From contig NW_003314267.1 in the NCBI RefSeq assembly GCF_000143415.4, positions 3,017,839-3,081,838 of the forward strand: a stretch of 64,000 nucleotides of DNA, given 5' to 3'. This DNA comes from Selaginella moellendorffii. Lineage: Eukaryota > Plantae > Lycopodiophyta. The notes beneath the pieces were generated by a model. That model had not been told where the DNA came from and did not search any database. It worked only from the letters and a program-made list of their open reading frames with translations. Within the stretch, counting starts at the first letter, position 1. Each line of letters begins with the position of its first letter. The position numbers and the translations under genes were made by a program. Positions 819-29,307 of this stretch are shown here, piece after piece.

Positions 819-3800
819 AGCAAACAGGGGGGTATAGCCTTTGACGTTTGCAGCTTGTTGCTCATCCGACCAGCCAAGAAGCCGAGAGAAAATAATTACT
901 TTGGTTAATTGAGCATCTTCTGTATTATACTTTGTCTACCTTCATTGCCAAGACAAATTTTATATTTAATCTTGTTGATATACTTAAGGGTTATATAAAA
1001 GGTTCAATGATGCTGTAGCTCTTTCAAACACTGTCATGGAATATAAAAATGGAATAGAAAAATGTACATCCCAATTAACCCAAAAACCTTTATTTATATA
1101 TAAAAACTAGAGGTTTGGATTAAAACCAATCTGATATCTATTAAAATTCCATTATGTTAATTTTAGTATACGGGCAATATATGAAAAGAAAGTGTACTTT
1201 ACTATCTTAAAAGAAAGTGTACTTTCTTTTCCTTTACAAACAGCTTTGATCCAATTGTTAGGTTTTTTTTGCTTCTCAAAAAATAGTGGTAACCATATTT
1301 TCAGCCTATTATAAATTATAAAATTAATAATAAAAATAATATATTTGTACCTTCCATTCTTCACAATGAGCTCTTCTTTTTATAGATTTTTCTTTTTGCA
1401 GATTATTTGAGTTAAGTGGAAGACAAAGAATGCCATATTTGGTTGTAACATTGCCACTTATCAATCATTCTACATTTACACCAGCAAAGCATGAAGTCCA
1501 ATTCAAAATCTTCTTTAGGGAGTGTGAACAACTTGATGGTTTTTTAGCAACTATGTTTGCATATATTTCAAAAATATTTATTATTTACTCTTCTTTTACA
1601 TTGACTAATTAACAAAGAGGAAATACCTAAGAAAAACTTCATATTAATTCTTCAAAACCTTTCTCTTCCCATTTAAATTGTTTATTAATAAATTTATCAA
1701 ATTTACTAATAAATCTATTTTTTTAAAATAGGGTTGTAGGATGATATCCCTATGGAAATGAGCCTCATGCTTTTCATTCAGAAAAATTGTTTGTAAATAA
1801 AACTTTATACACCTTATGTTATTACATTATCCCCTGATTCATAATTTACTATCATATGTTTAAAAATAATTAAATATGGAATTAATGTATTTCTAAAATA
1901 AAAAATCCTAATTTTTAATTATGTGTTACAATTGATTGAACTTACAAAAGAAAACTTTAAAGTGATTTATTTAAATAAACTATTATTATATTACTTTAAA
2001 ATGCATTTATATAAATTTTACTATCTTAATTAAAAGTAAGTATTTTACAATAATATTTAAATTGTCATATAATTTTACTTATTTTTATTTACTAATTAGA
2101 TTTTGTGATTGGCTATTCCACTCTAAAGCATTTTTGGAAGGTTGTTAAATGGATGACAAACCAAAAATGACAGTGTATATTGAAATTTTTAATGTTTATT
2201 GCAATTTGGAAAAATTGAGGTAGAGGTTTAGTTAAAAAGCTTAATATACTAAACATTAGAAATCTTCTAAGTATATTCTATTTCAAAAAATATATTGATA
2301 ACTAATAATCTATATCAGCAATTTAATTTTGTAAGTGTAATATTTCCTAAAATATTTAAAGACAGATCAATTCTTACTTGCCAAATTCTTAAATTAAGTG
2401 ACCAATTCTTCATATATACACTTCCATCTCTATGAAATAGTATTATACATTTATACCATATTATGTTTAATTGATCTTCATTTAAATCACTTGATGTTAC
2501 ACTAGTATGTTGCCCAATATATGCAATTACTTCTACATTACCACGAATAGAAATTATTTTTCCAGTTCGATTATGATTAAGAGTGTAATAAATTACAATT
2601 ACAAATATCTATATCAGAAACTCTAGAAAAATAATAAGGCAAACATTTCCATAAATATCCGTCACTCATTGAGTATGTTTTGTTTAAAAGATAAGATAAA
2701 TAGAAAACCAGTTAAAAATATTTCTTCATTTCTTCAATGTCTAAGTAAATATGTAACCAACAAAACCACATGTTTATAAAGCATTTTTTTATGTATTTGT
2801 AAAAATAAGACAAGAAAATATAAGTGTTGTCCAAACAAGAAGGTATCTTGGATCTTAGTGGAAGAGTTATAACAGTAACTGATATCTATTCTCTTAGGTA
2901 ATGATACTTAAGGAGGTTGAGATTTGGGAATCTCCAATTGCATTGTATAGATCATAGGAAATAATATAAACACCTTATCATAGCACATAGAGCTTTATAG
3001 ATGCTATGAGGTAGCCAACTAGCTATGATGCCCAAGAGTATTTAGGGAAATAGAAATCTAAGAGTCATTATTTGGGTAAGATTATCGATGCAAAGTGTTT
3101 GAAGTGTTTAATAGTGATCATTTAGAAAATTAAGAGCTACTTGTGTGTCTTAAGTTGGATCTTTAAGTGGAATGGAGTAATGGTTGTAATCAATTTGTGC
3201 AAGTAGAATATTGCTGTTGAGAAATATCCCATTTGTGGCATTTAGCACCTTAATGCCATTGTAAGTTGGGTATCAATTAGCAAATGATATAGTTATTAAT
3301 TTAGATAGATCCAAATGAAGGAGATATTATTTATCCAAATTCAAGCTTTCCTTGTGCATTGCATACGCTTGGTTTCTTAAAAAATTGATATACCATGAGA
3401 AAAATGGCTTTGAGAAATAAATGCAAATTGAAACAAATTAACTTGTTCCAAAGTTGTTCCTAACATATCTTCAATATCCTTTCCTGAATGAGCTTGAAAT
3501 ATTTTTGAAGAAAAGAAAATAATTTAAGCAATGCCAGAATACTTAACAAAACAAAGTTTTAATCTTACCAGAATTATCACATCATCGGTTGGAATAAATT
3601 AGCAAGGATATGGGATGATCCAAAGTATTCACCGCGTCTAAATGGACAAACTTTATATAGATTCTATGTTACAACTTAATCAGCAATATTCTTTGCAAGA
3701 TAAAGTGAAAATTCACTTTATAAGTTTTGCCTATGTTATGTATTATTTACATTGAAAATACCAATATCCTCAATAGACTCAAAGAGATATTTATAAAACC

Positions 3801-3879
3801 ACACCACTTCCTCATACAATTCTCATCATAAATGCTTGACATACTTAAAAAAAAACTCTTAGAAAGGTAAACTTCAAGC

Positions 3880-4560
3880 ACCTACTTAGTTCCTTTTGAT
3901 ATTCCACATATAAAACTTCTTGCTTTTACACCCCAACACTAGATTATATTAACCTCCACACTATTGTGTTCTAGAGCATTATCACTCGTTATTTGTTTTG
4001 ACTTCCCAAGGTAGCATACAGTCTGTGTATATGTGTTGAAAATAGCATAGACTTCTTTGATTGTGGATAGCTTGCAAGCCATAATAAAATGTGTTGCCCC
4101 ACAAATCATGGCATGAACGTAATATCTGTAAGTTATAACTTTGCAATATGTTACAAAAATACAAAAATAATAGTTAAAAAAGATAAGGAAGAAAATTAAT
4201 TAAAATTGTTTCATTAGTGTAGATCCATTGATGAATTCATGACAAATGCTTACTTTGCAGCCTTCTTAGATTATGTAAAGCTAATGCTTTACAAATTTAA
4301 TGCCTACTAAAATGGTAATCAATTGCTCAACAACAAGAGTGGGAGTTAATAATTCCCTAATTTGTCCCTATATAATTCATGGAAATATTAGTTTTGATGT
4401 GGTTAAGAACTTTCTTTATCAGTATCCTATAGTACACCCCCTCCAATTTGTACCCACCACCCACGTATATTTGTATAGTGTTGGCCACATAATTCCCAAA
4501 TAATTTGCAAGATAAACCATGGTTTTTGTCTCAAGAATCTTCAAGTGCATCCATAAGCAA
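3880..4560 (-). mobile_element. Heavily decayed gypsy-type DDE integrase remnant, apparently intron-containing (Ginger-like?)
   Basis: Minus-strand pieces H..TKT..LGIMWPTLYK (zinc-binding region like), VGIKFVK..GCK, YYVHAMICGATHFIMACKL, LGKSKQITSDNALEHNS (SDNG-like); stops and frameshifts; candidate intron 4126-4253. Confidence 0.4.
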
Positions 4561-5195: not shown

Positions 5196-5885
5196 CATTT
5201 CTTTTTCCCTCCATCCATCCATCCGTCCATGCATCCACAGCTTCTTGTAAGCGCGATCTTCCATCTGGATCGATCCATTTAGACATCCATCAATTTATTG
5301 AAACATCGAAACAGAAACCAAAACAAAGAAACTTTATTGTCTGTTTCTATCACACCTGTCATCTCCGCGAAGAACCAATCCTCCTAAAAAGACGCCATCA
5401 CGCCATCCGCCTATACACAAGGAACTCTTCCTGTTCTTCCGCCTCCTATACTGCCGATCGATCCATCGCTGGAATGAAGCAATTGTGGAGAGGATTGGGT
5501 CCCGTGGGAACCGTTATCTTGGAGGTTCCAAACATTGAAGGGTTGCAGAGGTGATCGGGGTCGCACAGGGAAGAAGATGATGCCGCTTCCTCCTGCAAAG
5601 TCGCGGTCGCGATGGATGGCGCCCCAGGAGGAGGAGGAGCTCCCGCCTTTGGATGGCGCTCTGGAATCAAGCCTCGGATCGCTGCTGCGGGGAATTGCGC
5701 GGTCGGGAGCCGGACCATGTCGCGCCCCTCCAGAGATTGGGGACGAAGAGGAGGAGGAGGAGCTCCCGCCTTTGTGCCTGAGCTTGTGCTGCGCAACGAA
5801 CACTGTGAAAACGGATAGAACAACCACGAATGCTAGAATGCCGGCCAAAAGCCACCATTTCCATCCCCGTTTCTCTGAGTGGTGT
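5196..5885 (-). repeat. Left arm of long inverted duplication (partner 8505-9166); carries 5'-truncated copy of a small transmembrane/Ser-rich ORF
   Basis: Reverse complement aligns by eye to 8505-9166 (RGW..AGILAFV..LSV.TVFVAQHKL, AIPRSSDPRLDSRAPS); internal duplication of KGGSSSSS. Confidence 0.85.
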
Positions 5886-5899
5886 CTTTAAAAACTCTT

Positions 5900-6215
5900 G
5901 CTCTTGCAACTCCGGGCCAGCTTCAATACTCGGTTAAAGCAAAAAACATATCCCTCAAAGTTGCTGAAGGGTAAGGCTTCCCATCGTCTCTCAAAACATG
6001 CGTGTAGAACAATGCAAGCTGGTGGGAAAGCTCCTACAATCAGAGAAAGATTTAGTCACAAAAATCAAAAGATAAAAAAAAAACCTTTGCAGGAAGTTCC
6101 TCAATCAGTCTCAGATCCTGTAATGAAAATTCTGGGCCCTGTACCTCACGCCATGCATAGAATTTTGATGTTGCCCACTCCTCCTTTCGGGTCTGCTGGT
6201 ATAACCAGTTCTAAT
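5900..6215 (-). mobile_element. Crypton/DUF3504-associated tyrosine-recombinase N-terminal fragment (pseudogenised)
   Basis: Spliced translation (phase-0 intron 6034-6084): VIPA/TRKEEWATSKFYAWRE..IEELPAK|ELSHQLALFYTHVLRDDGKPYPSATLRDMFFA/NRVLK, matching the NT..WA..F..W / EL..L..F..V...DG.PYP..TL pattern of Crypton-derived proteins. Confidence 0.6.
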
Positions 6216-7294
6216 TGGTTCTCGTCCTCCTCATTCGGAACAACAGGTCGAAAAGGTTGGCGACCGACTTGCATCAACAAAAGATTTCAACCTGGGGCAT
6301 CAAAGCAAAACATCATTTACTTGTCTCCAACTACAGCCACCATGCCCACCACGCTGACTGCGATTTCCCAGGACAAACCTGTCAAACGATTGCAAGTGAG
6401 TAAACAAGAATACAGAAAAACTAGAGAACCGAATTCAAAAAAGGAGCCGCATTCTCAACAAGATCAGCGGCATTCTGGGACAATCCCAGATCAAATGAAG
6501 AAGGATCCATCTACAGATAGACAAAATTGAGAGGATTAAGAAGGAAAAACTAAGAAATCCAGAGAAAACCAGGAAAATTCTGCCTTGAGCGCCATGCAAA
6601 ATTCCAGACAAGGATCAATCTAGCTGCTATGCCTCAGATCTGACCTTGGGCCGCTACCGCTTCCACCTGCTACCGCTTACCGCTACCGGCAGCCTCCGAG
6701 AACGCCGAGGAGCTTGTCGCGGATACGGATTTTCCAGACGGCATCGAGCTCCAGCCAGAGGCAAGAATTGAGATTTTGCTGGCTCTGGCATTGCTAACGT
6801 GCATTCTCTGTCATGCACAGCTCAAGAGATTAAAGCTTCGCAAGAACAACTGCGATTCCGAGGCATACCAATTCGATGAGGTCTCAATATGAAGTTGTCG
6901 AATGATCTCCAGCTCGCCTTCTGTGAAGAAATCCTCCTAGCTTTGATCTCGATCCAGCGCAAAGCAGAGCTTACCGCTAACGCACACAAGCGAGCGGTGA
7001 GCTCAGGCTGAAGAGCGATTCGTTGATCCTGGAATGCCCCATGGAGTAGCGAGCGCGCGCCGTCTCCATCCACCCCTGGAAGAAAATGCGATGTAGAAAG
7101 AGCTGCTAGACTATATAGCACTCACTTGCCTGCGCGAGTTGCCGCGAAGCCTGAGGATCGCATCACGGAATCCAAGCACGCAATCACTGTCGCGTCCTCG
7201 TCCATCATAGCTGTCGTCGTAGCTGCGCAGGCTAGGGGGGCAACAGCCACGATCGTCTCCTCCACTAGTCTCCTCAAGATGATGCGAAGAACCC

Positions 7295-7650
7295 TAGATT
7301 CTGGACTACTACGATGACTACGAGGAGGAAGATTACGCCCACAGCAGCTCAGCCTCAGCTCCGGGTAAGCGATTCATCGATGAGCGCGGGATTTATCTCC
7401 AGATCTCTTCCAGGAACAGCGCCGCAGCAACCAATCTGGGCTTGCCCCATCTGTACATACGATAATCTGGAGGAACATCAGTCGTGTGAGATGTGTGGAG
7501 TGGTGCGAGACTCTTCACGCTTCCGGCTCTAAATCACTCTAAAACTTGCTGAGCAAAACGATTTGAATCCATCAATGCAGTTGGAAGTGCGCGTCCAAGG
7601 CCTGAGCCTTCGCAGCTTGCAACGTCCTTGTTTGCTCCTCTCCCTCCTCT
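7295..7650 (+). pseudogene. Captured N-terminal fragment of plant HBS1-like GTPase (acidic tract plus RanBP2-type zinc finger)
   Basis: DYYDDYEEEDY, short GT..AG intron, WACPICTYDNLEEHQSCEMCGVVR; no GTPase domain follows. Confidence 0.6.
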
Positions 7651-7723
7651 GGCACTCCAGATTAAGCATTAAGATACGCGGGGCTCTTGGAGATGCGGTT
7701 CCTTCCTTCTGCCGGTAGAGCAG

Positions 7724-7970
7724 CTACACCGCAGCTCTGAGCAATCCAGGGTGGCCATAGCCATCCAGAAACACCTGCCTGCCAAGCTTGTTGTCCCAAA
7801 GAACCAAGTAGTCGTGCTCCCGCCGGAGGTTGAGCCCCCTAATCGTCAGAACGATGTCCCTGTGCTCGTGATCCACATAGATGAGATACGGTGGCACAAT
7901 CCTCTCCAGGTCGCTCGTCTTCTTCACCACATTCTCGAGCGAGATTTTGTAGCGCCACCGTCCAGGAGCT
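7724..7970 (-). pseudogene. Fragment of mono-/diacylglycerol lipase (class 3 lipase)
   Basis: PPYLIYVDHEHRDIVLTIRGLNLRREHDYLVLWDNKLG..DGYGHPGLLRAA; truncated before GHSLG. Confidence 0.8.
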
Positions 7971-8428
7971 CCTATCGGTCGCCCCGATGTAGATGCATCG
8001 CTTGTACGCCCAGCGCGTAGCAGCGGCACTCCAATCGCCACGGACATCGCCGGGAAGAAATTTACCTCGTCCTCCTCTCTAGCGCTTGTTCTGCCTCAAC
8101 CATCTCAAGCACGGCGGCTAGATGGCGACAAAAAAGGCATTCCTGTGTTTGTCCAGTTTGGTCGAATCCTAGGCTAACTGAGTGGTGACGTTCGCAGAAG
8201 GAGGATGGGAGGAGAAAAGCTATGGGCGGTGAACATGATCTGTTTTGGTATTTGTAGTTTCTTTGCTTGCGTCCATGAATGGAGAGTGGGTCCTTGTTTG
8301 ACCGCTACAAGATACCCCAGACGCAAAATTGTACTCGAGGGGGGTCTTTGTGTGCATCAGGATTTCTCGGGTGATCGATCAATCGGTGTCGAGTTTTTGA
8401 TCAGCAGCAGAGCAGAGCAGTCGCAGCG

Positions 8429-8923
8429 ATGACTATGGCGAAGATTTTGCTAGTGGCAACGGTGGCAATGCTTGTTGTCGCCCCGCTTTTGGTCCAGGCG
8501 CTTCACCACATAGAGAAACGGGGATGGAAATGCTGGGTTTTAGCCGGCATTCTAGCATTCGTGGCTGTTCTATCCGTTCTCACAGTGTTTGTTGCGCAGC
8601 ACAAGCTCAACAACTCCTCCTCCTCTTCTTCCTCATCCCCAATCTCTAGAGCTCCCGATGGCGCAATTCCCCGCAGCAGCGATCCGAGGCTTGATTCCAG
8701 AGCGCCATCCATGGCGATGGAGGTCACCGCGACTTTGCAGGAGCAAGCAGCATCATCTTCTTCCCCGTGCGACGCCGATCATCTCTGCAGCCCTCCAATG
8801 TGCCCTCCAGAGAACGGTTCCCACGGGACCCAACCCTCTCCACATTTGAGTAGCTCCAGCGATGGATCGATCGGCAGTGTGGAAGAACAGGAAGAATTCC
8901 TTGTGTATAGGCGGATTGCGTGA
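8429..8923 (+). CDS. Hypothetical 164-aa protein: signal-like N-terminus, second hydrophobic segment, Ser-rich tail; possibly chimeric
   Basis: Open ATG-to-stop ORF with two hydrophobic stretches; related copies at 5411-5885 and 19630-19955 are truncated. Confidence 0.35.
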   Translation: MTMAKILLVATVAMLVVAPLLVQALHHIEKRGWKCWVLAGILAFVAVLSVLTVFVAQHKLNNSSSSSSSSPISRAPDGAIPRSSDPRLDSRAPSMAMEVTATLQEQAASSSSPCDADHLCSPPMCPPENGSHGTQPSPHLSSSSDGSIGSVEEQEEFLVYRRIA

Positions 8924-9166
8924 TCGCAGGTCTTTTAGGAGGATTGGTTCTTCGTGGAGATGACGGTGTGATAGAAATGTGATCATCGCTAGCCAGAATA
9001 TAAAGTTTCTTCGATCGATGTTTCAATAGATTGATGGATGTCTAAGTGGATCGATCGAGATGGAAGATCGCGCTTAAAAGAAGCAGTGGATGGATGGAGC
9101 TCGTAGAGCTGGCTCGAGGAGCTTGAATGGAAACGAGCGTTGGGGAGAGAAAGGGAAAAAGAAATG
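8505..9166 (+). repeat. Right arm of inverted duplication (partner 5196-5885)
   Basis: Sequence similarity to the reverse complement of 5196-5885, including the CATTTCTTTTTCCCT end block. Confidence 0.85.
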
Positions 9167-9389: not shown

Positions 9390-10962
9390 GGAGAGGTACC
9401 AAGGACGTTACTTCCCAGCCTGACCTCTTGCCTCTCCTACATCTCCCAGGTGTGAGCTACACACACCAAGCTGTGGAGGTGTATCCAAACACATCGCTTC
9501 TACTCATTGGGTGCTGGACTCACAGTTCTCGTCTAGGCATCACCTGGCGGACCTGCTGCTGTTGTTGCTTTCAGCAGCCCGGGAGCTAGAGGCTCATTGG
9601 AGTCGCGGTCCTTTCAGCTCTATTAGGAGATGAAGCGTAACATGTACAGCATCATGGGAGCAACAAGTTGGCATGGTTTGCTTGGTGTAGCACCAGGGAG
9701 CATCGAACAATGCGGCTTGTTCAGTGAGTGATGGGAGCTCCTTCCAGACACACAGCCCAAATGGGATTCTCGTCAAACTACAGAGAGGAGACAAGTCTAC
9801 GTGCTTAGTGCATTAGAGAGTGAGTAAAAACTTACTGTGCATCTGTGAGGTGTGTGTGACTTGCAATAAACAGCCATCCTAGATTTGCTAGAATGCAAAC
9901 ACATGAACCATCACAATGTTAGGCTCACTGGATTTTGTTGTATTGATCACGATGCCATTGAGTTTCACTGGACTGGAGAAACGTCGCAAGGCACCTTGGA
10001 TTCACTCTAGAGAAGCAGCACATTGGTTTTTTTCTTCTGAGAAATACCTGTATCATTCAGAAATTCTGAACACTCTCTTGCATTTTCTCCAGGTACTTCA
10101 GCACTTTTTTCTTTACAGAAGATTGCTCAACAAAAAACCAGCAGTATCGAAACTATAAACTAAATTATAAGGATTCAAGTGATTATGAAAGGAATACAAT
10201 CATCCACGGGGAGAGCATATGAAGGGCCAGACAGCCTGGAAACATGTTGATCTACTCATCTGAGTGTGGCGCTTTTCATGGGCCAGTTGCAGCTCTAGTT
10301 CTTTTATCTGAAAAGAAAACTATAAAAATCCCTTCTCAACAACTAAGAAACACTGAGGGGCTTTACCTCTGTTACCTGAACAAATTGAAAACATAAGTTA
10401 AAATAGCATAAATATTGTACAACTTTTCTAAATAGCTACGCAAATCGAGTTTGTAGAGCACTGTCTGTTTCTGTGAGCTACATCTTCAAAACGTATAGAT
10501 GAGCTCGTAGGGCAACCATGCAGCATCATACCTTCAAATGAAAAGCTTTTGATAGCCTTGTAATCCATTGCTAGATCTCAGTGTTCACCCTGTTTAAATT
10601 CTGGTAAAGATGTCCACACGTGATGTTTTGAGGACAAATCAAAAGCCTCAAAATTCGAGTTACTTCTTTGCAGAACTTCTGCTTTATCATGTCTGTAATT
10701 TGAGGGATAAATATTTCACAGCCACTGCCTTAAAATAACCCACTAGTTTTTTTTTCCTCTGGTTAAACATCCAGTATAGAAGGATGCCAAAAGCAAAGAT
10801 CATCTTCACAATCTGAAACAAAAGGCTGAGCTTTTTCTATACTAACAGATTCAATAACATGCTGGTTTTGATAAAATAAGAGTCTTCAGATTCTGATTTG
10901 AGGGAATGACCACATTGCTCTTCAGCAACAGGGATATATCAATTCAAAGTTATTGAGGTGAA
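9390..10962 (+). repeat. 1.57-kb direct duplication, copy 1 (partner 16913-18527); starts with 3' part of a lipase-like pseudogene
   Basis: Near-identical sequence from GGAGAGGTACCAAGGAC to GTTATTGAGGTGAA; paired near-identical ORFs 9916-10158 / 17459-17701. Confidence 0.95.
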
Positions 10963-11242
10963 AGAATGCCTGACAAACAGTCAGCTTCAAACCTACAATG
11001 GGAAAATGAGAACCTGCATGCTAAGGTACTTTTGAGTGTTGGTGTACCTAATGGCTCTGGAGAGCACAACATGCGGAATGGACTTTTTGGCTACAAATGC
11101 CAGAAGAAATGAGAAGATCAGTCCATCCAGCTCAAGGATTTCTTACCTGTTTGTCATCCACCATTGGAGCAACAAGAAATGACAGACTAGGAATGAAACG
11201 AACAAGAGAGAAAACCCTAGGCCAACATCCCAACCTTTAATG

Positions 11243-14200
11243 TGTTATGGCCTTAAATCCCACTGGCCATAGAATATTCTTAAAATATTTCTGTAGTTTG
11301 TGTCATTCTTCCCTCTTTCATGACCCAGCCACATATGGCTGCCTCGAGAAGCTAAATGAGCCTCACATGAAGGGAGTCCAAGGCAATATGGCCATGAAGA
11401 AAAAATGTGTAAACAATAACACTAACATCACGATAAACAGCCACGAAAGAAAGAAAGTAATATGGCTTTCTCATATGACAATATGGTCATGGAAACAAAA
11501 GAATGAAAATAGAACAAACAACTCAAATCATATAGCAATATGGCTATAGAACTCAATTCTCCCCTTCCTTAGGAATGTTATCCAAGTCATAACCAAAACT
11601 CGGAAACACTCTTTTTATGTCATCCTCAATTTCCCATGTAGCTTTGTCTATGAAATAACCATTCTATTGAACTAATAACTCTTTAGTTGTCTTCTAGCAT
11701 ATTTTCACCAATCTTTGAGCAAGAATATTGGCTGAACCAACCTTCTCTACATCAATCTCTAGGACTTGGATGATGGATTAATCTATGACATCACTAAAGT
11801 GCAAACACACTTTAAACTTGCTCATATGGAATGTTGGATGAATCTTTGAATTAGCTGACAAGTCCAAAGTGTATGCAAGATCCCCCACACACTATAAAAT
11901 TGTCCAAGGCCCACAATACCATGGAGACAACTTAGCACTATCACCTCTTTTCAAAGATTGTTGTGCATCTGACAGCTTAAGGAAAACTTTGTCACCAACT
12001 TTGTACTCTTGATGACGATGATGCTCATTGGCCAATCTTTTGTTTTGCTCTTGAACTTGCCATGTTCAACTTTACCAATTCAAGCTTGTCCTGTATATCC
12101 TCTAGGAAATCACAAGCATGAGATACCCGAACCAAAGCCAAATTCAAATTCACATGAGACTTAGGCTCATAGCCATACATTGCCATAAAGGGAGACATGC
12201 TAATAACTGATTGGTAAGCATTATTGTGAGCAAACTGAAGCAAAGGCAAGTACTCCTCCCATACTCCATGTCGAGTCAAGTTTCTCACAAAAGGCCTTAG
12301 TATATATTTTAATAGCTAATTCATGTGCTTTATCTGCCCATCAGATTGTGGATGCTCACCACTACTCATGCTCAACTTAGTCTTTACTTTTTCATAGACT
12401 GTTTGCCAAAACTTGGACGTGAACTTGGGATTCCGATCACTCACAATGTCACCTGGCAAACCATAGAGATTGAATAACTAGTTTACAAACAATTAAGCAA
12501 ATTCAAAAGCTTTTATTGTCGTGTTCACAAGGAAGAAGTGAACCATCTTTGTCAAACGATCCACAACAACCTAAATAGCATCATTTCCTTGAAAGGTTTT
12601 GGGCAAACCAGTGATAAAGTCCATTGAGATGCTATCCCACTTATTCTTGGGTATACATAAAGGATGATAAAGGCTAGCAAGTTTCTGATGATCAATTTTG
12701 ACCGCTTGGTAGGTCAAACAACCACATATGTACTTCTGAACATCTGATTTCATCCCAGGCCAAAAGAAATGCCCCTTCACCAACATATATGTTCTCAATA
12801 CCCCCAGATGCTTGGCACTGAACACATCATGACACTCAACCAAAATCTATTTGATGAGTTTATCAATACGAAAAACCACTACACATCCTTTTTTCACTAG
12901 GATTCTATCTTGTATTTCGAATGACACAAACTTGTCACCTTTTAAATCTGTAGAGGCATCTCTCAACAAAATCTTCACAAGAATGTAAAAGAGTCAAAGT
13001 TAACAAACTCTTTAAACTCATCTAAGAGATCATTAGATAGCTTCATGAACGAGATAGAATTTACCATCTTAGATAATGCATTAGCCATATTATTATCACC
13101 TCCATGCTTGTACTAGATTTTAACAAACATTTCTTGTAGAAACTTTTGCTAATGAGCAAGATGGCCTCAAAGATCCACATCTGGAGAGATTGATAATCTG
13201 AATATACATGGAAGTCTGATCTATACAGATAATGTTGCCATTCCTTTAGAATGGCAATCATTACATACAACTCCTTATTGCGAGTAAGTTAATTCCATTG
13301 TGTGGCATTAAACTTGTGGCTCATGAATGTGATAGAATGCCTAACTTGAAGCAATATAGCCCCAAAAACACTATCACTCACATCATTATTTATAATTTCC
13401 ACCATAGTCACCTTATCATTCATTAGCCCCTTTAAAACAATCCTTGCTCTAATGTCTAGTCATGTGGCAATGAAAACAATTGCTCTTCACCTTGTCTTTC
13501 TCTCACTGGTCCAAACGAAGCTTCATAGCCTCACTACCATGTTTATTCTTCGAGCCACAACGGAACAATAGTTATTTCTTCCCTGAATATGAAGTATTGG
13601 CAAGCTGGTTATCACGTTGACTACACCGTAGACCATCCCGTTGACCATAATTGACCAAGTTGATCGACAGTTTGAGCAAAAAGATCTAAGCCTTAGTGAT
13701 AGCATCAATCAATATTGCTAGAAAATCCTTCTTAACCTTTTGCTACACATCCACTGAGCTCAATCCTTTAATGAAACATTGCACCTTTAGCAACTCATTA
13801 TGGTGCCTGTGAGATTAAGGCAAAGATCACGGAACTTGCGGGCATACATATCCAAAGACAAAGTCCCCTGCCGGATCTTTAACAGCTGGTTCACGAAATC
13901 AACCTCTTCAAACTTCTTGACAAATAAAGTGTGGAAAACTTTTGTCAAATTAATTCAAGAAGTCGACTTCGGATTAGCTTTGATGTAGTTCTTCCACTAC
14001 GAAGAAGTATGGCCCGTAAGCTTTGTCACAAAGAAATTTATCTTCACTTTATCCTCATAAGGATTGTGAAACTAACAACTTTCCCACAATTCCAACAAAA
14101 AATTGACTATTATAATTATTCAGTAATGATTTCCATTCCACAATACCATAATCTTTAGCATGTTTAATATACCAATAGTAATCACAGACATAAGATCAAT

Positions 14201-14316: not shown

Positions 14317-14438
14317 AACCTAGAAAAAAATGTAAGCCCAAAATGAAACAAGCGCAGCAAACCCGTGCACTGCGCTCCTCCCATGTGTGGTAGATCCCAG
14401 GCTGCCGTCCACACAGCACGGCAGACACTTTCTTGGGC
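14317..14438 (+). repeat. Displaced copy of the BCD1 upstream region (partner 24074-24183)
   Basis: AATGAAACAAGCGCAGCAAACC..CTCCTCCCATGTGTGGTAGATCCCAGGCTGCCGTCCACACA present at both sites. Confidence 0.9.
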
Positions 14439-14439
14439 A

Positions 14440-15812
14440 TCTTCTCAATGCTGTGGTTCGCCCAGAATTCAAATCATTGAAGACTATGCTCAAGAACTCA
14501 ACAAAAACCTTCATTAAAATGCAAGTAGCTCTTATCAATGAAGAAGAACCAGCCGAAGACCAGACACCTGCAGATACAACCACAACCACAGCTTTGTTTG
14601 TCAACTCAAAGCAAACAAAGAATTCTCCAGGTAGAGGAGGCAGCGAGCAACACTGTGAACAGCTTCAAGGCTAGCAATGTTGGAGACAGCAACTCACTTG
14701 AGCGTAAAGGTGAGTGCAATTATTGTAAGCGGGTCGGACACTATGCCAGAGAATGCCGAGACAGGTTAGCAGGGCGTCCTTGAGGATTGGGGAGAAAGAA
14801 CGCCAAGACTGGCTATACAAACCAGTCAAGAGCTCTCATGGTAAGAGCTATTCCAGAACCTGTGTTTGTTCAGCAGCAGGATCAAGACGTAATCTGGCTG
14901 GAGATAGCAGCAAAGATGCACATGACTGGCAGGCGAGAAGCTTTCCTGAACCTCAGGAAATTTTTACAGGCAGGCAGGTTGGTTTAGAAGACAAGAGTCT
15001 TCTGTCAGTTGTCACAGTTCAAGTAAAGCTCGACATATCAGGAACATGTATTTTGTTCCAGGCTTGGCATATCATCGGTGCAGCTTCTAACAACGGTTTC
15101 TATTTTATTTTTAACGCCAAGCAGGCTATTATGCAAGACAAGAAGACAGATCAAGCAGTGGCTTATGGACAACACTATTCTGGACTTCATAAACTCAACG
15201 CCACCATGGTTGTTCCAGACAAGCAGCCGGATAGAGCACTTTCAACTCGAGCGAGTAATTTCCAGTTGTGGCATGAGTGTCTAGGCCATGTGCATGAAGA
15301 CGCCCTCAAAGCAGTGTCCAGAGATCAAGCACATGCACAAAAATTCGAGTTTACAGGCAAGTTTGAATTTTGTGAGGCTTGTGCGCTAGGAAAACAAGCA
15401 TGCACATCATTTCCAAAGTTTTCAGAATCCAAGAGCAGTCAGCCTCTTGAGCTCGTTCACACAGATGTGTGTGGGCCTTTCCATGTCCAAAGCCATCGTG
15501 GAATGAGGTATTTCTTGACATCCATCGATGACTACTCACACTACACAGTCGTGAGACTTTTGGCCAAGAAATCTGAAGTTCTTGATCACTTTAAAGTTTA
15601 CAAGACTTCAGCTGAAAATCTTCTTGGTAAGCTTTACGCAGTGACAAAGGTGGCGAGTACACATCAGCAGTTTACAGCTCCAGATAGTCCTGCTCAAAAC
15701 GGAGTTGCTGAAAGAATGAACCAGACTCTTATGGAGAGTGCACGTAATATGCTTAGTCACGTAGGAATGCCACTAACGTTCTGGGCCAAGGCGATTAATA
15801 CATGTAATTAAT
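14440..15812 (+). mobile_element. Ty1/copia retrotransposon, 5' part (gag zinc knuckle, GAG-pre-integrase, integrase)
   Basis: CNYCKRVGHYAREC; LWHECLGH; CEACALGKQ; LELVHTDVCGPF; PAQNGVAERMNQTL..FWAKAINTCN. Confidence 0.95.
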
Positions 15813-16501: not shown

Positions 16502-17330
16502 ATGAAGAAAAATCACAAATGCATGGCTTGCACTCTCCTGCTCTTGCTCTTGGTTGTCCCTGCCATTGTTACTGCTAGTGTTTTTCTAGCCCGCTGTCAC
16601 CACCACTGCTCAGCCAAACCAGTCCCACCAAGTGAAGAAGCTCCGGAAGCATGGGACGAAGTCTCTAAGCTCTCACAGCATGATCCCAAGTGTCTGGCAC
16701 TTTTCAACTCACCACAATCTCCACCAAAACCTATGGATGCCTGCCTCCATCCCCAGCTGGAAGCCATCGCCCAAACTTCCAACACTCAGCCCTCGGACAC
16801 CAAAGCTTGGGGCCTAGTGTACAAGGAAGACACCTCCACTAACAAACACCTTATGGTTGTGTTTTGGGGCACCTCCACCCAGGCAAACATGTGCATCAAT
16901 TGGATCCTGTTTGGAGAGGTACCAAGGACATTACTTCCCAGCCTGACCTCTTGCCTCTCCTACATCTCCCAGGTGTGAGCTACACACACCAAGCTGTGGA
17001 GGTGTATCCAAACACATCGCTTCTACTCATTGGGTGCTGGACTCACAGTTCTCGTCTAGGCATCACTGGCGGACCTGCTGCTGCTGTTGCTTTCAGCAGC
17101 CCGGGAGCTAGAGGCTCATTGGAGTCGCGGTCCTTTCAGCTCTATTAGGAGATGAAGCGTAACATGTAACAGGTGGGATTCCATGGTCACAGCATCATGG
17201 GAGCAACAAGTTGGCATGGTTTGCTTGGTGTAGCACCAGGGAGCATCGGACAGTGCAGCTTGTTCAATGAGTGATGGGAGCTCCTTCCAGACACACAGCC
17301 CAAATGGGATTCTCAATAAACTACAGAGAG
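16502..17330 (+). pseudogene. Membrane-anchored class-3 lipase-like pseudogene
   Basis: N-terminal hydrophobic anchor; HLMVVFWGT (VVAFRGT-like); downstream ITGG..AVAFSSPG in a shifted frame. Confidence 0.5.
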
Positions 17331-18527
17331 GAGACAAGTCTACGTGCTTAGTGCATTAGAGAGTGAGTAAAAACTTACTGTGCATCTGTGAGGTGTGTGT
17401 GACTCGCAATAAACAGCCATCCTAGATTTGCTAGAATGCAAACACATGAACCATCACAATGTTAGGCTCACTGGATTTTGTTGTATTGATCACGATGCCA
17501 TTGAGTTTCACTGGACTGGAGAAACGTCGCAAGGCACCTTGGATTCACTCTAGAGAAGCAGCACATTGGTTTTTTTCTTCTGAGCAATACCTGTATCATT
17601 CAGAAATTCTGAACACTCTCTTGCATTTTCTCCAGGTACTTCAGCACTTTTTTCTTTACAGAAGATTGCTCAACAAAAAACCAGCAGTATCGAAACTATA
17701 AACTAAATTATAAGGATTCAAGTGATTACGAAAGGAATACAATCATCCACGGGGAGAGCATATGAAGGGCCAGACAGCCTGGAAACATGTTGATCTTGTA
17801 CCATGATATGAAAATCACTCATCTGAGTGTGGCGCTTTTCATGGGCCAATTGCAGCTCTAGTTCTTTTATCTGAAAAGAAAATTATAAAAATCCCTTCTC
17901 AACAACTACCTTTTCTATATAGAAACACTGAGGGGCTTTACCTTGCTTAGATTTGCTATTACCTGAACAAATTGAAAACATAAGTTAAAATAGCATAAAT
18001 ATTGTACGACTTTTCTAATCGACTTTGTAGAGCATTGTCCTCTGTGAGCTACATCTTCAAAACATACAGATGAGCACGTAGGGCAACTACACAGCATCAT
18101 ATTTTCAAATGGAAAGCTTTTGATAGCCTTGTAATCCATTACTAGATCTTGGTGTCCACCCTGTTTAAATTCTGGTAAAGGACGTCCACATGTGATGTTT
18201 TGAGGACAAATCAAAAGACTCAAAATTTGAGTTCCTTCCTTTTCTTTATCATGTCTGTAATTTGAGGGATAAATATTTCACAGCCACTGCCTTAAAATAA
18301 CCTGCTATTTTTTTTTCCTCTGGTTAAACATCCAGTATAGAAGGATGCCAAACACAAAGATAGTCTTCACAATCTGAAACAAAAGGCTGAGCTTTTTCTA
18401 AACAGATTCAGTAACATACTAGTTTTGATAAAATAAGAGTCTTCAGATTCTGATTTGAGGGAACGACCGCATTTCTCTTCAGCTACAATGGATGTGGGAT
18501 ATATCAATTCAAAGTTATTGAGGTGAA
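16913..18527 (+). repeat. 1.6-kb direct duplication, copy 2 (partner 9390-10962)
   Basis: Direct sequence match with small indels. Confidence 0.95.
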
Positions 18528-18870
18528 CCCCGCAGTGGGTGCTACAAAATTTCGCTCGAGAACGTGGTGAAGAAGACGAGCGACCTGGAGAGGATTGTGC
18601 CGCCGTATCACATCTATGATGAGCACACGGGGGACATCGTTCTGACGATTAGGGGGCTCAACCTTCGGCGGGAGAACGACTACTTGGTTCTTTGGGACAA
18701 CAAGCTTGGCAGGCAGGAGTTTCTGGATGGCTATGTCCACCATGGATTGCTCAGAGCTGCGGTGTGGCTGCTCTACCAGGAGAAGGAAACGCTGAACCTC
18801 CGGCGGGAGAACGACTACTTGGTTCTTTGGGACAGCAAGTTTGGGTTTCTGGATGGCTATGTCCAGAAGA
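18528..18870 (+). pseudogene. Second mono-/diacylglycerol lipase fragment with internal tandem duplication
   Basis: VPPYHIYDEHTGDIVLTIRGLNLRRENDYLVLWDNKLG..YVHHGLLRAAVW, then LNLRRENDYLVLWD..FLDGYV repeated. Confidence 0.8.
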
Positions 18871-19125
18871 CGAGCTGGGTACTGAATGTGAGCGCGCGGG
18901 GTGTTTGGCAGACTTTCCGACTGGAACATCGTGATCGTGTGGCGAGGAACCGTGACTGGAGTGGAGTGGCTGGAGAATCTCCAGGACTATCTCATGCCAG
19001 TGGGTTTGGATCCGCGGGACAGATCCACGGCGGGCGTCAAGGTGGAGAGTAGCTTCCTCGACATCTACATGACCAGCAAGTCCCGGAGCCGATACAACAA
19101 GTTGAGCGCGCGGCAGCAGCTCATC
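18870..19125 (+). pseudogene. DAD1-like phospholipase A1 fragment
   Basis: IVIVWRGTVTGVEWLENL..VKVESSFLDIY..RYNKLSARQQL. Confidence 0.8.
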
Positions 19126-19139
19126 TGCGCCCTGATCGC

Positions 19140-19297
19140 AAACAGGATCCAATTGATGCACATGTTTGCCTGGGTGGAGGTGCCCCAAAACACAACCATA
19201 AGGTGTTTGTTAGTGGAGGTGTCTTCCTTGTACACTCGGCCCGAGCTCCGGTGTCCGAGGGCTGAGAGTTGGAAGTTTGGGCGATGGCTTCCAGCTG
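19140..19297 (-). repeat. Inverted copy of 16754-16912 (lipase-like pseudogene segment)
   Basis: Shared MGHLHPGKHVHQLDPV ORF start on opposite strands (16864+, 19188-). Confidence 0.9.
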
Positions 19298-19629
19298 TGC
19301 TTTCTAGAGTTTACAGCTATAACTTTCAACTGATTATGTTAAAATTAATATTAAAATGCTTAATCTTGATGTTAAAATGCTTGAAAATTCAATGTGCCCA
19401 AAAATGTTCTATACTTTTCCCAACAGAGCTGGGATCCCAGATAGTAATTATTTTGTAAGTTATTAGAAAATAACCATTCTTGAACTAATTTATATTGTAA
19501 AAAGTATCCTGGATGTTTACTTTCGACATAATCAGGACAACTAACTTGTAACTAATTAATATTAGCATCAAAAAGTCTTTGAAATCTAACTATCAAAATA
19601 CTACCTTTAAGAGCTTCTTTCGCTATTAT

Positions 19630-19955
19630 CTATTGAAACATCCGAAACAAAGAAACTTTTCTATCACACCCGTCATCTCCATGAAGAACCAATCCTCGTA
19701 AAAGACTTGCGATCACGCAATCCGCCTATACACAAGGAACTCTTCCTGTTCTTCCGCCTCCTACACTGCCGACCGATCCATCGCTCGAGTGACTCAATTG
19801 TGGCGAGGGTTGGGATCGTTTTCTTGCAGAGGTGATCGGCGTCGTACGGGGAAGAAGATGATGCTGCTTGCTCCTGCAAAGTCGCGGTGACCTCCATCAC
19901 CATGGATGGCGCTCTGGAATCAAGCCTCGGATCGCTGCTGCGGGGAATTGCGCCA
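19630..19955 (-). repeat. Third, truncated copy of the 8429-8923 ORF family
   Basis: GAIPRSSDPRLDSRAPSMVMEVTATLQEQAASSSSPYDADHLC. Confidence 0.9.
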
Positions 19956-20151: not shown

Positions 20152-21690
20152 AATTCGCAATCTAGTGCCTACCCAGCCTCTTGCAGATATTCCTTATTGT
20201 CTTTGGACCGGGAAGCAAGTCAGCTTGAGACATCTACGAGTTTTTTATGCAAAAGTTTCTAACAGTCATCGCAGAAAATTGGAGCCGAAGAGCATTCCTT
20301 GCATCATGGTTGGCTATTGTCTCGAGACTAAAGCTTATCGTCTTTACAACATGGCCACCAGATCAATTCTTATCAGCAGAGATGTCCAGTTTGATGAGAA
20401 TTCTCTTTACAAGCATTGTTATAAAAATCCTGAGACTCCATCTTATGTTTTACTTTATGATGAAGAGGACGTTTCTAGGGCATCTGGGCCGCAGCCGCAC
20501 TCCTCAGCAGCAGGTCGAAGCAGAGTCGCAGCCCCCACTCGAGCCTAGTCCTGTCACACCCGAGCAAGAAGATGAAGCAGTTACGCCATTTGATGACGCC
20601 TTCATTTTTCCAGGTTTGTTTGATGAACCAGAGGAGGAGGAGTCTCCACCAGGGCAGCCGCAAGCAGAGCCTAGTACTCCTGTGGCTGCAAGATCTCAGC
20701 AAGAAGCCGATCCAATTATTCCCAGCAAACCTTATCGGACTGTCACACGCAGCTATTTATCGCAAGCAGCTCAAGATGCTCAAGACTCCGGCCTCAAATT
20801 GCTGTCAGTCATGGAGCAGCTTCCTTCTGAACCAGGCACAGTTTGTGTAGCTCTCCAATCACCAGAAGCAGGACAGTGGAAGGCTGCTATGCAGGAGGAG
20901 TACAACTCTTTGGTACGTAACAAGGTTTGTGAGTTTGTTTCTCTTCCACCAGGCGGGAAAATTGTCAGTACCAAGTGCAAATTGGATGCCATTCGAGCAG
21001 TGACTCGACATCGAGCTCGCTTTGTAGCAAGAGGATTTAGTCAAGTACTTGGTGTGGATTTTTCTGAGACTTTTTCGCAGGTGGCTAAAATGTCTTCTAT
21101 AAGAATTATTGCAGCATATTGGGATCTGGAGTCCATCAGCTTGATATCAAGATGGCCTTTTTATATGCTAAGTTTAAGGAGGAAGTCTATATTTCTCAGC
21201 CAAATGGATTTATTATCCTAGGACAGGAACCTAAGGTGTGTCGACTTAAGCGTGTGGCTTGAAGTAGGCTCTTAGAGTGGTATGAGCACATGGACAAGTT
21301 TCTTTCCTCCATTAACTTTAAGAAGGATAGCAATGTGTATATTTCTAGCTTTGGAGCTGCGACAGTACTTATCCCAGTTTAAGATTTCAGCGACTGGACA
21401 TCTTTCTTATTGCCTTGGGATCCAGGTGCTTTGGGACAGAGAAGCATCGGTCATCGAGCTCTCTCAAGCACATTATGTTGAAGAAATCTTGCACAAGTTC
21501 AACATGCAAGATTGCAAGCCCATGACAACGCCCATGGATCCAGGTCTTGTGCTGTCTATTGAGCAAAGTCCCAACTGTGAGGAGGAGAAAGCAATGATGG
21601 TGAAAGTTCCATATCGACAAGCAGTTGGATGCCTTATTTATCTAGCCATCAGTACTAGACCAGATGTAGTTGGAGCAATCTACAACATTT
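20152..21690 (+). mobile_element. Ty1/copia retrotransposon, 3' part (integrase C-terminus/SH3, reverse transcriptase), frameshifted and truncated
   Basis: HLRVF..KLEPKS..VGY..KAYRLY..ISRDVQFDE; WKAAMQEEYNSL; RARFVARGFSQVLGVDFSETFS; PYRQAVGCLIYLAISTRPDV. Confidence 0.95.
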
Positions 21691-24224: not shown

Positions 24225-25435
24225 ATGAGCGGCAAATGCGAGGAGTGTGGGCAGAGCGCCGCCAAGTACAAGTGCCCCGGCTGCGGCTTGCGCTCGTGCG
24301 GCTTATCCTGTGTGAAAGCGCACAAGGCTCGAATCGGCTGCACTGGGAAGCGCGATCCGACAGCGTTTGTGAAAATCTCGGATTTCGATGACAATCGGAT
24401 CATGTCGGGTAAGTGGATTCGATTTGCACCTAGTGAGGATTCTTATGTGGAGTTGTAGATTATAATTTTCTCGAGGAGGCTCTGAGAGTGGCTGATGTTG
24501 CGAAGCGATCGAAATATAAGTCTTTTGTGGGAGGCCGCAAGCCGGGCGTGTTGAAGGAGCTGATCTACCAGGCTCGCTTTCGCAAAACCAAGTTTGTTCA
24601 CATGGCAAATGGAATGTCGAGAAGGATAGCTAATACCACGTACTTCAACAGGAAGTAAGCTCTCCCACTTTCCTCCTCACGGATTGTTCTTTGCTAAAGC
24701 TTTAAATGCACTCTAGGCGGAAGTGCATGTACTGGAGAGTTGAATGGATCTTTCATTCCACCGACATTCGCCTTGTTGACGAGAAGTATGTTCATCCCTG
24801 CTCGACTCTTCAAGTGTATTGACTGACACGATTCCTCTATTTTTTCCAGTTTGGACGAGCATGTCAACCTTGGTACCGTGCTTGAGAAACATTTATCGCC
24901 CCAGTCGCACAGTCCGACCGCTCGACACCAATTGCGGGACTTTTTGCAGCAACCAGTAGATCAGCTGAAGCTTCTCTTCAAGAAAGAGCTCGATGATGTA
25001 AGAACTTGTGTGTGTGTTTTGTATCCGGTTGCTAATTCTGGTAACCATCAGGCCAAAGAATCGTACTACGAGCTAAACATCAACGAATCTCTTCGCCAGC
25101 AGCTTTCTTTCAAGACAGTATTGGAGTTTCCAGAGATCAGGGTCGTGCTGCCGTCCGATATAGACAGGTTTTCCATTGTAGAAGAAGAGCCGAAGCCCGT
25201 CAAGCCTGCTGCTTCCCCTGTTAAATCAGTGGCGGAAGAGTTGGTCGAGCAAACTGGTAAGACGTTTCGAGAAGAGGAAATCAAGGACGAAGAGCAGGAC
25301 AAAGAGCAGGACGATATGAAAATGTATGATTTCCTCGGAGATCTACCAGGACAGGCAGACTTACTATGGAAAAGTATGGAGGTCCAGCCGCCAAGTTTGA
25401 TGAATGACGTGGAAGACGGAGAACTCTCGGGCTAG
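24225..25435 (+). CDS. BCD1: Box C/D snoRNA protein 1 (zf-HIT, ZNHIT6-like); exons 24225-24408, 24459-24654, 24717-24785, 24850-24997, 25052-25435
   Basis: CEEC..KYKCPGC..SCGLSCVKAHK..CTGKRD; spliced SDYNFLEE and MYWRVEWIF motifs; all junctions GT-AG and frame-preserving. Confidence 0.92.
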
Positions 25436-25484
25436 TTTCTGGGACACACAGGCTTTCTTTTCCAAAAGTTTTGTAGAATTCGCA

Positions 25485-26045: not shown

Positions 26046-26173
26046 TGGGAGAGAACGCAATAGCAAAGGTGTCGAATTACGACAAAGTTCTCGACAGTGA
26101 CAATTCCGTGGGGACCGTGTTTACGTTCTGACCGGGTCACGTTGGAAGAACACGCTGTCTCCCGGGTGCCTTG

Positions 26174-28839: not shown

Positions 28840-29307
28840 ATGGATTTCAGAGGATCGCCATTGGCTTTGTTCTCTCAGTTGTGGTGGTGTTTGCAGAGAA
28901 TGAGAACGATCCTCCTCGAGTTTCTGTGGTCGAAGGGATCGTCTACTGTCAGGATTGTCAAGGGCATTGGACAAAGAAGATCTCAGGTACTTTGAAAGCT
29001 CCATTCTCACCAGGATTTCCTTCTTCTTTTTCTCTCTTCACAGATGCTCTTGTGAGCGCTGTCTTCAAGAACAAGGCAGGTTGATCACAGCGTACGCCAT
29101 GGACAACAGTGACGACTCTGGTCAAATTTCCAAGCCTCCACCAAGAAAACACGACTTGCCTTGCACAGCTCGTCACAACATCTGACGAGACTTGCAACAA
29201 AACGACCAACGAGGGGGACGGTGCTCAAGGTGCCAAGCTGCGTCCATTCGCTTCTTATTACAACGAGATGTTCTTCAGAGTCGGGCCATTCGCCTTCACT
29301 CCACACT
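28840..29307 (+). pseudogene. Pollen Ole e 1-like gene, damaged copy
   Basis: Same sequence as 31814-32323 with several small deletions and frameshifts; 3' end cut by the duplication junction. Confidence 0.88.

What the first reader, a model, noticed from the sequence alone, without database searches (positions are those of the whole stretch)
5900..6215. Crypton-like (tyrosine recombinase transposon) fragment with a spliceosomal intron in a land plant
Seen, and absent from the ORF track: removing a 51-nt phase-0 intron (6034-6084) gives TRKEEWATSKFYAWRE..IEELPAK|ELSHQLALFYTHVLRDDGKPYPSATLRDMFFA..RVLK. Known: this pattern typifies the region N-terminal to DUF3504 in Crypton recombinases and their domesticated derivatives (ZMYM, KCTD1, QRICH1, KIAA1958). 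Cryptons are best known from fungi, animals and stramenopiles, and I am not aware of them being well described in land plants. Inference: a plant Crypton family or a domesticated derivative exists elsewhere in this genome, and the host-sized intron suggests long residence.
Basis: partly seen in the sequence, partly recalled or inferred. Interest (0 to 1): 0.75.

Follow-up and report, generated by a model that had tools for sequence, protein, structure and literature searches.

The report
Dead fragment of a spikemoss Crypton-like transposon
This stretch is a broken 0.8-kb internal piece of a 3.27-kb jumping gene of the spikemoss Selaginella moellendorffii that encodes a tyrosine recombinase; the piece is inert, but the papers I could search list no element of this type in land plants.

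Summary
On the minus strand, window 6192-6085 and 6033-5926 encode the two peptides, separated by a 51-nt GT..AG phase-0 gap at 6084-6034.

The peptide is part of a larger homology. Window 6680-5885 (-) matches positions about 317-1224 of a 3267-bp unit at 82-89% DNA identity. That unit forms a tandem tetramer on scaffold GL377575.1 and a front-truncated copy on GL377669.1 of the same genome (S. moellendorffii; the window lies on GL377571.1).

The unit carries one multi-intron gene and no reverse transcriptase. Profile matches run in the expected order: QRICH1-type N-terminal domain, then DUF3504, then phage-integrase C-terminus. Most of these matches are weak.

The window copy holds the start codon, three short introns and the front of the N-terminal domain. 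It is cut at both ends inside the unit and has at least four frameshifting deletions and a lost splice acceptor. Exons and introns have diverged equally (91.1% vs 90.8%), so it is dead.

'Long residence' is not shown. This scan had already found the same family on other DNA (s1-385019, s1-380490, s1-410721). The joined spliced peptide was never searched; exons were searched apart.

The parts
6612..6680 (-). 5' leader piece of the element (unit positions about 317-386); 5' break of the fragment at about 6680
   Evidence: blastn 82% over 71 bp; 38-bp core 6649-6612 at 97-100%; no significant homology further upstream
6511..6611 (-). Rest of the leader, with deletions of 21, 11 and 54 nt relative to sister copies
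   Evidence: alignment A1 and indel list
6430..6510 (-). Exon A: start ATG (6510-6508) and 27 intact codons (MDPSSFDLGL...)
   Evidence: tblastn of gene model P0002 res 628-654; 95% identity to sister copies
6379..6429 (-). Intron 1, 51 nt, GT..AG (57 nt in sister copies)
   Evidence: same junction used in annotated model P0002
6321..6378 (-). Exon B, 58 nt instead of 60: a 2-nt deletion after 6366 shifts the frame
6269..6320 (-). Intron 2, 52 nt; acceptor AG mutated to AA (6270-6269)
6085..6268 (-). Exon C, 184 nt instead of 189: 2-nt deletion after 6194 (frameshift) and 3-nt deletion after 6181.
6034..6084 (-).
   Evidence: same acceptor used by model P0002
5885..6033 (-). Exon D, front part only (ELSHQ...): 1-nt deletion in T-run 5946-5941, 8-nt deletion after 5916; 3' break of the fragment at 5885 (unit position about 1224)
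   Evidence: atlas match of 6033-5926 to PF25561 clusters
5226..5884 (.). Not part of the element: left arm of an 82% inverted duplication (partner 8504-9098), a truncated copy of a small membrane-protein ORF; it abuts the fragment with no overlap or filler

Best explanation
Window 6680-5885 (minus strand) is a dead internal fragment, about 0.8 kb, of a 3267-bp DNA element of Selaginella moellendorffii. It covers unit positions about 317-1224.

The element carries one gene with many 50-60-nt introns. The protein begins with a QRICH1-type (SAM-like, DNA-binding) domain and continues into a DUF3504/phage-integrase-type tyrosine recombinase. This is the make-up of a Crypton.

By analogy with Cryptons, an active copy would be excised as a circle by its recombinase and re-inserted by site-specific recombination. 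The head-to-tail tetramer at another locus fits that. This mechanism is inferred, not shown.

The window copy keeps only the leader, the start codon, exons A-C, three introns and the first part of exon D, that is the front of the DNA-binding domain. It has no catalytic domain, is cut at both ends inside the unit, and has drifted neutrally. It does nothing now.

It did not arrive as a primary insertion. It was left by deletion or rearrangement in a duplicated, retrotransposon-rich patch.
For: Shown:
- DNA identity is 88-89% over 680 bp to four sister copies and covers leader, exons and introns alike. Against one unit, two pieces match: 6680-6612 at 82% and 6576-5885 at 86.5%.
- The unit has a 3267-bp period and forms a tetramer, L001 2614-21244. 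Its first copy is split by a 5.56-kb insertion with TG..CA ends and a 5-bp target duplication.
- A second locus, L002, holds unit positions 932-3267 and stops at the same right end, next to an unrelated flank.
- The window is S. moellendorffii GL377571.1. The sister loci are GL377575.1 and GL377669.1.
- Protein evidence: exon 2 lands on PF25561 QRICH1 clusters at 0.94 and 0.93 with 174 and 172 shared features. Exon D of a sister copy hits PF25561 at E = 0.12 on profile positions 50-87 of 115. The ORF L001:19339-19944 hits PF12012 DUF3504 at E = 0.016 over profile 19-160 of 162. Gene model P0002 hits PF00589 at 7.4e-11, 42.6 bits, above the cut-off, and XerA at 9e-6. UniRef names it a Tyr recombinase domain protein.
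- No reverse transcriptase or second gene is present in the unit.
- Decay: at least four frameshifting deletions, a lost intron-2 acceptor, and exons 91.1% vs introns 90.8% identical to the sister consensus.
- There is no homology beyond either break.
Against: - The DUF3504 and QRICH1 matches are all below Pfam's curated scores.
- The PF00589 score of P0002 sums two copies inside a chimeric gene model. A single-copy model (P0008) gives only E = 0.038.
- There were no PDB sequence hits, and the AlphaFold model was unusable at pLDDT 40.
- I found no relative outside Selaginella. The word searches were limited by the length rule, the big search used a 36-aa query, and the metagenome scan was blank.
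- The first His of the H-x-x-R motif reads as Lys in every copy seen.
- Terminal direct repeats are only 1-2 bp, against 4-6 bp in described Cryptons.
- No transcript data were available to me.
Confidence: 0.85

Rival explanations
1. The 3267-bp unit is a tyrosine-recombinase element or tandemly amplified gene of another kind, not a Crypton in the strict sense. It could be a remnant of a DIRS/Ngaro-type retroelement, or an unclassified recombinase element. The window piece would then be a fragment of that.
For: The DUF3504 and QRICH1 hits are sub-threshold. Terminal direct repeats are only 1-2 bp. The H-x-x-R histidine is replaced by Lys. No outside relatives were retrieved for a tree.
Against: The unit has no reverse transcriptase or other gene, and at 3.27 kb no room for one. 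The gene keeps many introns, which an RNA-copied element would lose. The same right end sits at two unrelated loci, and the array has head-to-tail junctions. The domain order QRICH1 then DUF3504 is that of Crypton-derived proteins.
Confidence: 0.1
2. The fragment was carried here as cargo or filler, either captured by another mobile element (Pack-MULE or Helitron style) or pasted in during double-strand-break repair. It did not decay in place from a full insertion.
For: Both breaks are internal to the unit. The 3' break joins cleanly, with no overlap, to a truncated copy of an unrelated ORF that is one arm of a 0.6-kb inverted duplication (5226-5884 / 8504-9098). The interval also holds other gene-like scraps: a RanBP2 finger ORF, and a piece duplicated at 18538-18788.
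Against: There is no target-site duplication at the outer ends of the inverted repeat, and its ends fade into a simple repeat. No transposase or Helitron hallmark was seen. The neighbourhood is a patchwork of segmental duplications and copia-type pieces that could produce such joints by plain rearrangement.
Confidence: 0.2
3. The piece is a pseudogene or exon set of a domesticated Crypton-derived host gene, such as the PAXX-head fusion that earlier scan notes report in this genome, and not of the transposon.
For: Earlier notes say that domesticated DUF3504 genes exist in this genome (unchecked by me). The fragment has host-type introns.
Against: DNA identity of 82-89%, including leader and introns, to a multi-copy 3267-bp unit with defined ends. 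There are frameshifts and a lost acceptor. Exon and intron divergence are equal.
Confidence: 0.03

Closest known systems
CryptonA / DUF3504-type Cryptons of animals (Kojima & Jurka 2011, PMC3212892) and Glomhoppers of Glomeromycota (PMC13465315)
   Same: A small DNA element whose only gene is a tyrosine recombinase. It has DUF3504-like similarity and no TIRs or LTRs. It is low in copy number and most copies are truncated. Glomhopper copies also contain predicted introns.
   Different: The host is a lycophyte. Pfam DUF3504 similarity is only sub-threshold. Lys stands where the H of H-x-x-R is expected. The terminal direct repeat is 1-2 bp rather than 4-6 bp. One locus is a head-to-tail tetramer.
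Domesticated Crypton genes QRICH1, ZMYM2-4/WOC, KCTD1, KIAA1958
   Same: The N-terminal helical domain (Pfam PF25561 'QRICH1 domain') is followed by DUF3504. The window peptide corresponds to roughly the first 85 of 115 profile positions.
   Different: Those are conserved single-copy host genes that lost the catalytic residues. This is a multi-copy element whose fuller copies keep R, K, R, H and Y, and the window copy is a decaying fragment.
DIRS/Ngaro tyrosine-recombinase retrotransposons and the plant ALOG domain derived from them (Iyer & Aravind 2012, PMC3537659)
   Same: The same superfamily of recombinase, with an N-terminal SAM-like DNA-binding domain. It is a precedent for recombinase N-domains persisting in land plants.
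   Different: The unit has no reverse transcriptase or RNase H and retains its introns. The peptide does not carry the ALOG zinc-ribbon insert (my reading of the sequence, not a formal test).
Sister copies in the same genome: tetramer on GL377575.1 (gene model SELMODRAFT_409570) and truncated copy on GL377669.1 (SELMODRAFT_428622)
   Same: The same family, with 82-89% DNA identity and the same exon-intron layout.
   Different: The window copy is older or more diverged: about 9-14% from the sister copies, against 3-5% among them. It is cut at both ends. It alone keeps the Trp codon that the tetramer copies have as TAG.

Membership tests
The 3267-bp Selaginella element family (this fragment as a member) | Nucleotide homology to the unit across coding and non-coding parts | tested here: met
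   88-89% over 680 bp to four copies. Pieces at 82% and 86.5% cover unit positions 317-1224. Alignment A1.
The 3267-bp Selaginella element family (this fragment as a member) | Complete unit with both termini | tested here: not met
   Both ends lie inside the unit and no homology extends beyond them. It is a fragment, not an insertion.
Crypton (tyrosine-recombinase DNA transposon), tested on the family's fuller copies | Encodes a tyrosine recombinase with the catalytic R..(K)..H-x-x-R..H/W..Y set | tested here: inconclusive
   PF00589 at 7.4e-11 on P0002, summing two copies. A single copy gives 0.038. XerA gives 9e-6. By motif reading, R, K, R, H and Y are present but the H-x-x-R histidine is Lys. 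None of this lies in the window.
Crypton (tyrosine-recombinase DNA transposon), tested on the family's fuller copies | The recombinase is the only gene: no reverse transcriptase, no TIR or LTR | tested here: met
   Three-frame reading and ORF scans of a whole unit found no reverse transcriptase. One minus-strand ORF gave only a weak, repeat-like Rcd1 hit. The ends are not inverted or long direct repeats.
Crypton (tyrosine-recombinase DNA transposon), tested on the family's fuller copies | Short (4-6 bp) direct repeats at both termini, similar across copies | tested here: inconclusive
   Only GA (2 bp) is shared at the two ends of the array, and 1 bp at the right end of L002.
Crypton (tyrosine-recombinase DNA transposon), tested on the family's fuller copies | Mobility: the same termini at unrelated loci | tested here: met
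   The right end is identical at L001 21244 and L002 10117, with unrelated flanks. Three scaffolds carry copies. I did not test empty sites.
Pfam PF12012 DUF3504 | Score at or above the gathering threshold (29.7 bits) | tested here: not met
   15.7 bits, E = 0.016, though over profile 19-160 of 162; 13.1 bits. The queries were read-through ORFs with intron text inside, which lowers the scores.
Pfam PF25561 QRICH1 domain (the window peptide) | Profile match of the peptide | tested here: inconclusive
   Window exons alone gave no hit. Sister exon D gave E = 0.12 at profile 50-87. The atlas gave 0.94 with 174 shared features to PF25561 clusters for exon 2, and nothing for exon 1. The joined peptide was not searched.
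Domesticated Crypton-derived host gene | Intact reading frame under purifying selection | tested here: not met
   There are frameshifts, stops and a lost acceptor. Exons are 91.1% and introns 90.8% identical to the sister consensus.

The most novel reading that the evidence does not exclude
The fragment is a trace of a land-plant lineage of DUF3504/QRICH1-type Cryptons that reached lycophytes by horizontal transfer from arbuscular-mycorrhizal fungi. Those fungi carry the related Glomhopper elements. The roughly 50-nt introns would then be fungal in origin rather than acquired in the plant. My data neither support nor exclude this, because I could not retrieve outside relatives for a tree.
Probability: 0.08. 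Interest if true: 0.65.

Novelty: new member of a known kind. Interest (0 to 1): 0.3.

Why it matters
The window piece itself is inert junk. Its value is as one more independent locus of a tyrosine-recombinase DNA transposon family in a vascular plant; I found copies on three scaffolds. The searchable literature lists Cryptons from fungi, animals, oomycetes and a diatom only (PMC3212892, PMC13465315; searches).

The piece is also the only copy I saw that keeps the Trp codon in the front of the N-terminal domain. That helps anyone who wants to read the family's original DNA-binding domain.

It also shows that the QRICH1-type domain plus DUF3504 pairing, known from animal host genes, occurs in a plant mobile element. 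The scan had already flagged this family elsewhere, so this finding adds a copy, not a discovery.

Tried and rejected
- Pfam on each window exon alone gave no hits.
- The atlas on exon 1 gave no usable hit.
- The big HMMER search with exon 2 (36 aa) gave one real hit, P0002. The other six were repeat proteins matching a 'DDG.PYP'-like word: FG-GAP, a 3655-aa repeat protein, and others.
- All three word searches returned only Selaginella gene models, because of the length rule. A 301-aa open frame in L002, found later, would have been a better query.
- The metagenome scan with P0008 found nothing.
- PDB sequence searches found nothing useful.
- AlphaFold on L002:7917-8819 without an alignment gave pLDDT 40, so I ran no fold search.
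- I tested whether the 5226-5884 / 8504-9098 inverted repeat is a Pack-MULE carrying the fragment. There is no target duplication, so this is not supported.
- The look-ups of two window ORFs as annotated genes, tried to see gene models near the fragment, found none on record.
- The plus-strand 210-aa ORF is not conserved in sister copies.
- The Rcd1 hit of a junction-spanning ORF in the array looks like a repeat artefact.

Full report
**Observation**

- Window 6210-6085 is an open stretch of 42 codons after a TAG.
- 6084-6034 is a 51-nt, T-rich GT..AG gap in phase 0.
- 6033-5926 reads ELSHQ...FFALTEY and then hits TGA.

Pfam finds nothing in either exon alone.

**What the exons resemble**

The protein-atlas look-up of exon 2 puts it next to clusters carrying PF25561 'QRICH1 domain' (0.94 and 0.93, with 174 and 172 shared features). 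Exon 1 gave nothing usable.

The one big HMMER search, run with exon 2, returned one true relative: P0002, 84% identical, a 1401-aa gene model. The other hits are repeat proteins sharing a short word.

P0002 is SELMODRAFT_409570 of Selaginella moellendorffii, which UniRef names 'Tyr recombinase domain-containing protein'. It lies on scaffold GL377575.1 (locus L001).

**The parent element**

L001 holds a head-to-tail array with a 3267-bp period.

Reading the junctions, the unit runs L001:11444-14710 and repeats at 14711 and 17977. A first copy, 2614-4286 plus 9847-11443, is split by a 5.56-kb insertion with TG..CA ends and a 5-bp duplication, AGATT. So the locus is a tetramer.

A second gene model, P0008 (SELMODRAFT_428622, scaffold GL377669.1, locus L002), sits on a copy that covers unit positions 932-3267. 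It ends at the same right terminus, next to an unrelated flank.

The window itself is GL377571.1 of the same assembly, with window x equal to record x + 3017835. The family is therefore on at least three scaffolds.

**The window copy**

Window 6576-5916 is 88-89% identical to all four L001 copies over 680 bp. With a shorter word size, the match to one unit is 6680-6612 (82%) plus 6576-5885 (86.5%), that is unit positions about 317-1224. Nothing significant aligns beyond either end.

The five-way alignment (A1) and its indel list give the anatomy on the minus strand.

| Part | Window coordinates | Notes |
|---|---|---|
| Leader | 6680-6511 | three deletions |
| Exon A | 6510-6430 | start ATG, 27 intact codons |
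| Intron 1 | 6429-6379 | 51 nt |
| Exon B | 6378-6321 | 2-nt deletion |
| Intron 2 | 6320-6269 | acceptor AG now AA |
| Exon C | 6268-6085 | 2-nt and 3-nt deletions |
| Exon D (front) | 6033-5885 | one T lost from a T7 run; 8-nt deletion |

- In the sister copies, exon C reads through from VGRQPF... to ...ELPAK in one frame, broken only by a shared TAG. The window has TGG there.
- The annotated model P0002 uses the same exon A|B and B|C junctions and the same acceptor before ELSHQ. It skips the TAG by using an upstream donor.
- Identity to the sister consensus is 91.1% in exons and 90.8% in introns. The copy has therefore drifted without selection.

**What the element encodes**

A three-frame reading of a whole unit shows one gene of at least eight short exons and no other gene.

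Pfam on reference ORFs and models:

| Query | Family | Result |
|---|---|---|
| Exon D of a sister copy | PF25561 | E = 0.12, profile 50-87 of 115 |
| L001:19339-19944 | PF12012 DUF3504 | E = 0.016, profile 19-160 of 162 |
| P0002 | PF00589 | 7.4e-11, two stretches |
| P0008 | PF00589 | 0.038 |
| P0002 | NCBIfam XerA | 9e-6 |

- The hits are individually weak, but they lie in the order expected for Crypton-type proteins.
- By motif reading I see R (..RGRKEL..), K (..VSKNY..), K-x-x-R where H-x-x-R is expected (..KDIRHS..), and H and Y (..GHKR..EQY). This is inference, not an aligned test.
- ORFs on the other strand show no reverse transcriptase.
- The retained introns argue for DNA-level copying.
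- The ends share only GA, shorter than the 4-6-bp repeats described for Cryptons (PMC3212892, PMC8969392).

**How the fragment sits in its surroundings**

The 3' break at 5885 joins, with no overlap or filler, to 5884-5226. That stretch is a truncated inverted duplicate (82%) of 8504-9098, which carries a 164-aa membrane-protein-like ORF. A third copy lies at 19655-19955.

The patch from about 4 kb to 22 kb is a mosaic of duplications and copia-type retrotransposon pieces. Ordinary plant genes follow further on: GH17 with an X8 domain, a TAXi-type aspartyl protease, Pyr_redox_2 and DUF617.

I tested whether the inverted repeat could be a Pack-MULE carrying the piece. There is no target duplication. 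How the piece was cut remains open.

**Literature**

- Kojima & Jurka (PMC3212892) list Cryptons from fungi, animals, oomycetes and a diatom.
- The 2026 Glomhopper paper (PMC13465315) adds DUF3504 Cryptons in mycorrhizal fungi.
- A plant-genome review mentions Cryptons only as a class (PMC11630846).
- My searches found no description of a land-plant Crypton. Repbase and subscription journals were not searchable.
- PMC6157073 notes that the intron length distribution of S. moellendorffii clusters with that of fungi. The roughly 50-nt introns therefore fit the host, but cannot prove long residence.

**Earlier notes of this scan**

The scan had already reported this family on other DNA of the same genome. 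I reached two of those loci independently and my measurements agree: the 18,631-bp tetramer and the 2,337-bp truncated copy. Their claims of relatives in ferns, mosses and liverworts, of a spliced transcript, and of a PAXX-fusion gene were not tested here.

**Verdict**

The object is a dead, doubly truncated relic of a Crypton-like element. The piece itself is of low interest, the family of moderate interest, and the scan has already recorded the family.

Noticed in passing
L001:17680-18123 and 14411-14857 (minus strand), unit positions about 2967-3267 + 1-147: A 148-aa ATG ORF crosses every unit-to-unit junction of the tetramer, so it is whole only in tandem or circular form. Its weak Rcd1 hit (1.3e-5, below cut-off) and 'VLENL'-like repeats suggest it reflects short inverted or tandem repeats near the element's 3' end. 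Those repeats are possible recombinase-binding sites.
   Followed up: partly
window 5226-5884, 8504-9098, 19655-19955: Three copies (82-98%) of a sequence. In the 8429-8923 copy it forms a 164-aa ATG ORF with a predicted membrane helix and Ser-rich tail, and it has no Pfam family. Two copies form an inverted pair around the fragment, with no target duplication at the outer ends.
   Followed up: partly
window 9390-10962 vs 16913-18527; 14753-15811; 20247-21221: A 1.6-kb direct repeat at 90.7% brackets a gag-pre-integrase/integrase ORF, with an RVT_2 ORF beyond it. These are copia-type LTR retrotransposon pieces. The flanks 7703-8980 and 18538-19955 are inverted copies of each other.
   Followed up: no
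window 7314-7532 (+): A 72-aa ORF with a RanBP2-type zinc finger (PF00641, 4.6e-4, below cut-off) lies between the fragment and the right arm of the inverted repeat.
   Followed up: no
window 24635-26809 vs 29305-31340: A duplicated block at 85-91% identity, partly inverted, flanks a GH17 beta-1,3-glucanase gene with an X8 domain (27277-28707).
   Followed up: no
L001:4287-9846: A 5.56-kb insertion with TG..CA ends, about 0.37-kb terminal repeats and a 5-bp duplication (AGATT) splits the first unit of the tetramer. It is an LTR retrotransposon that landed after the array formed.
   Followed up: partly
L001 10001-20957 (gene model P0002): The public 1401-aa model SELMODRAFT_409570 is a chimera stitched across three to four decayed tandem copies. 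It uses wrong frames in several exons, and its strong PF00589 score comes from two copies of the same exons.
   Followed up: yes
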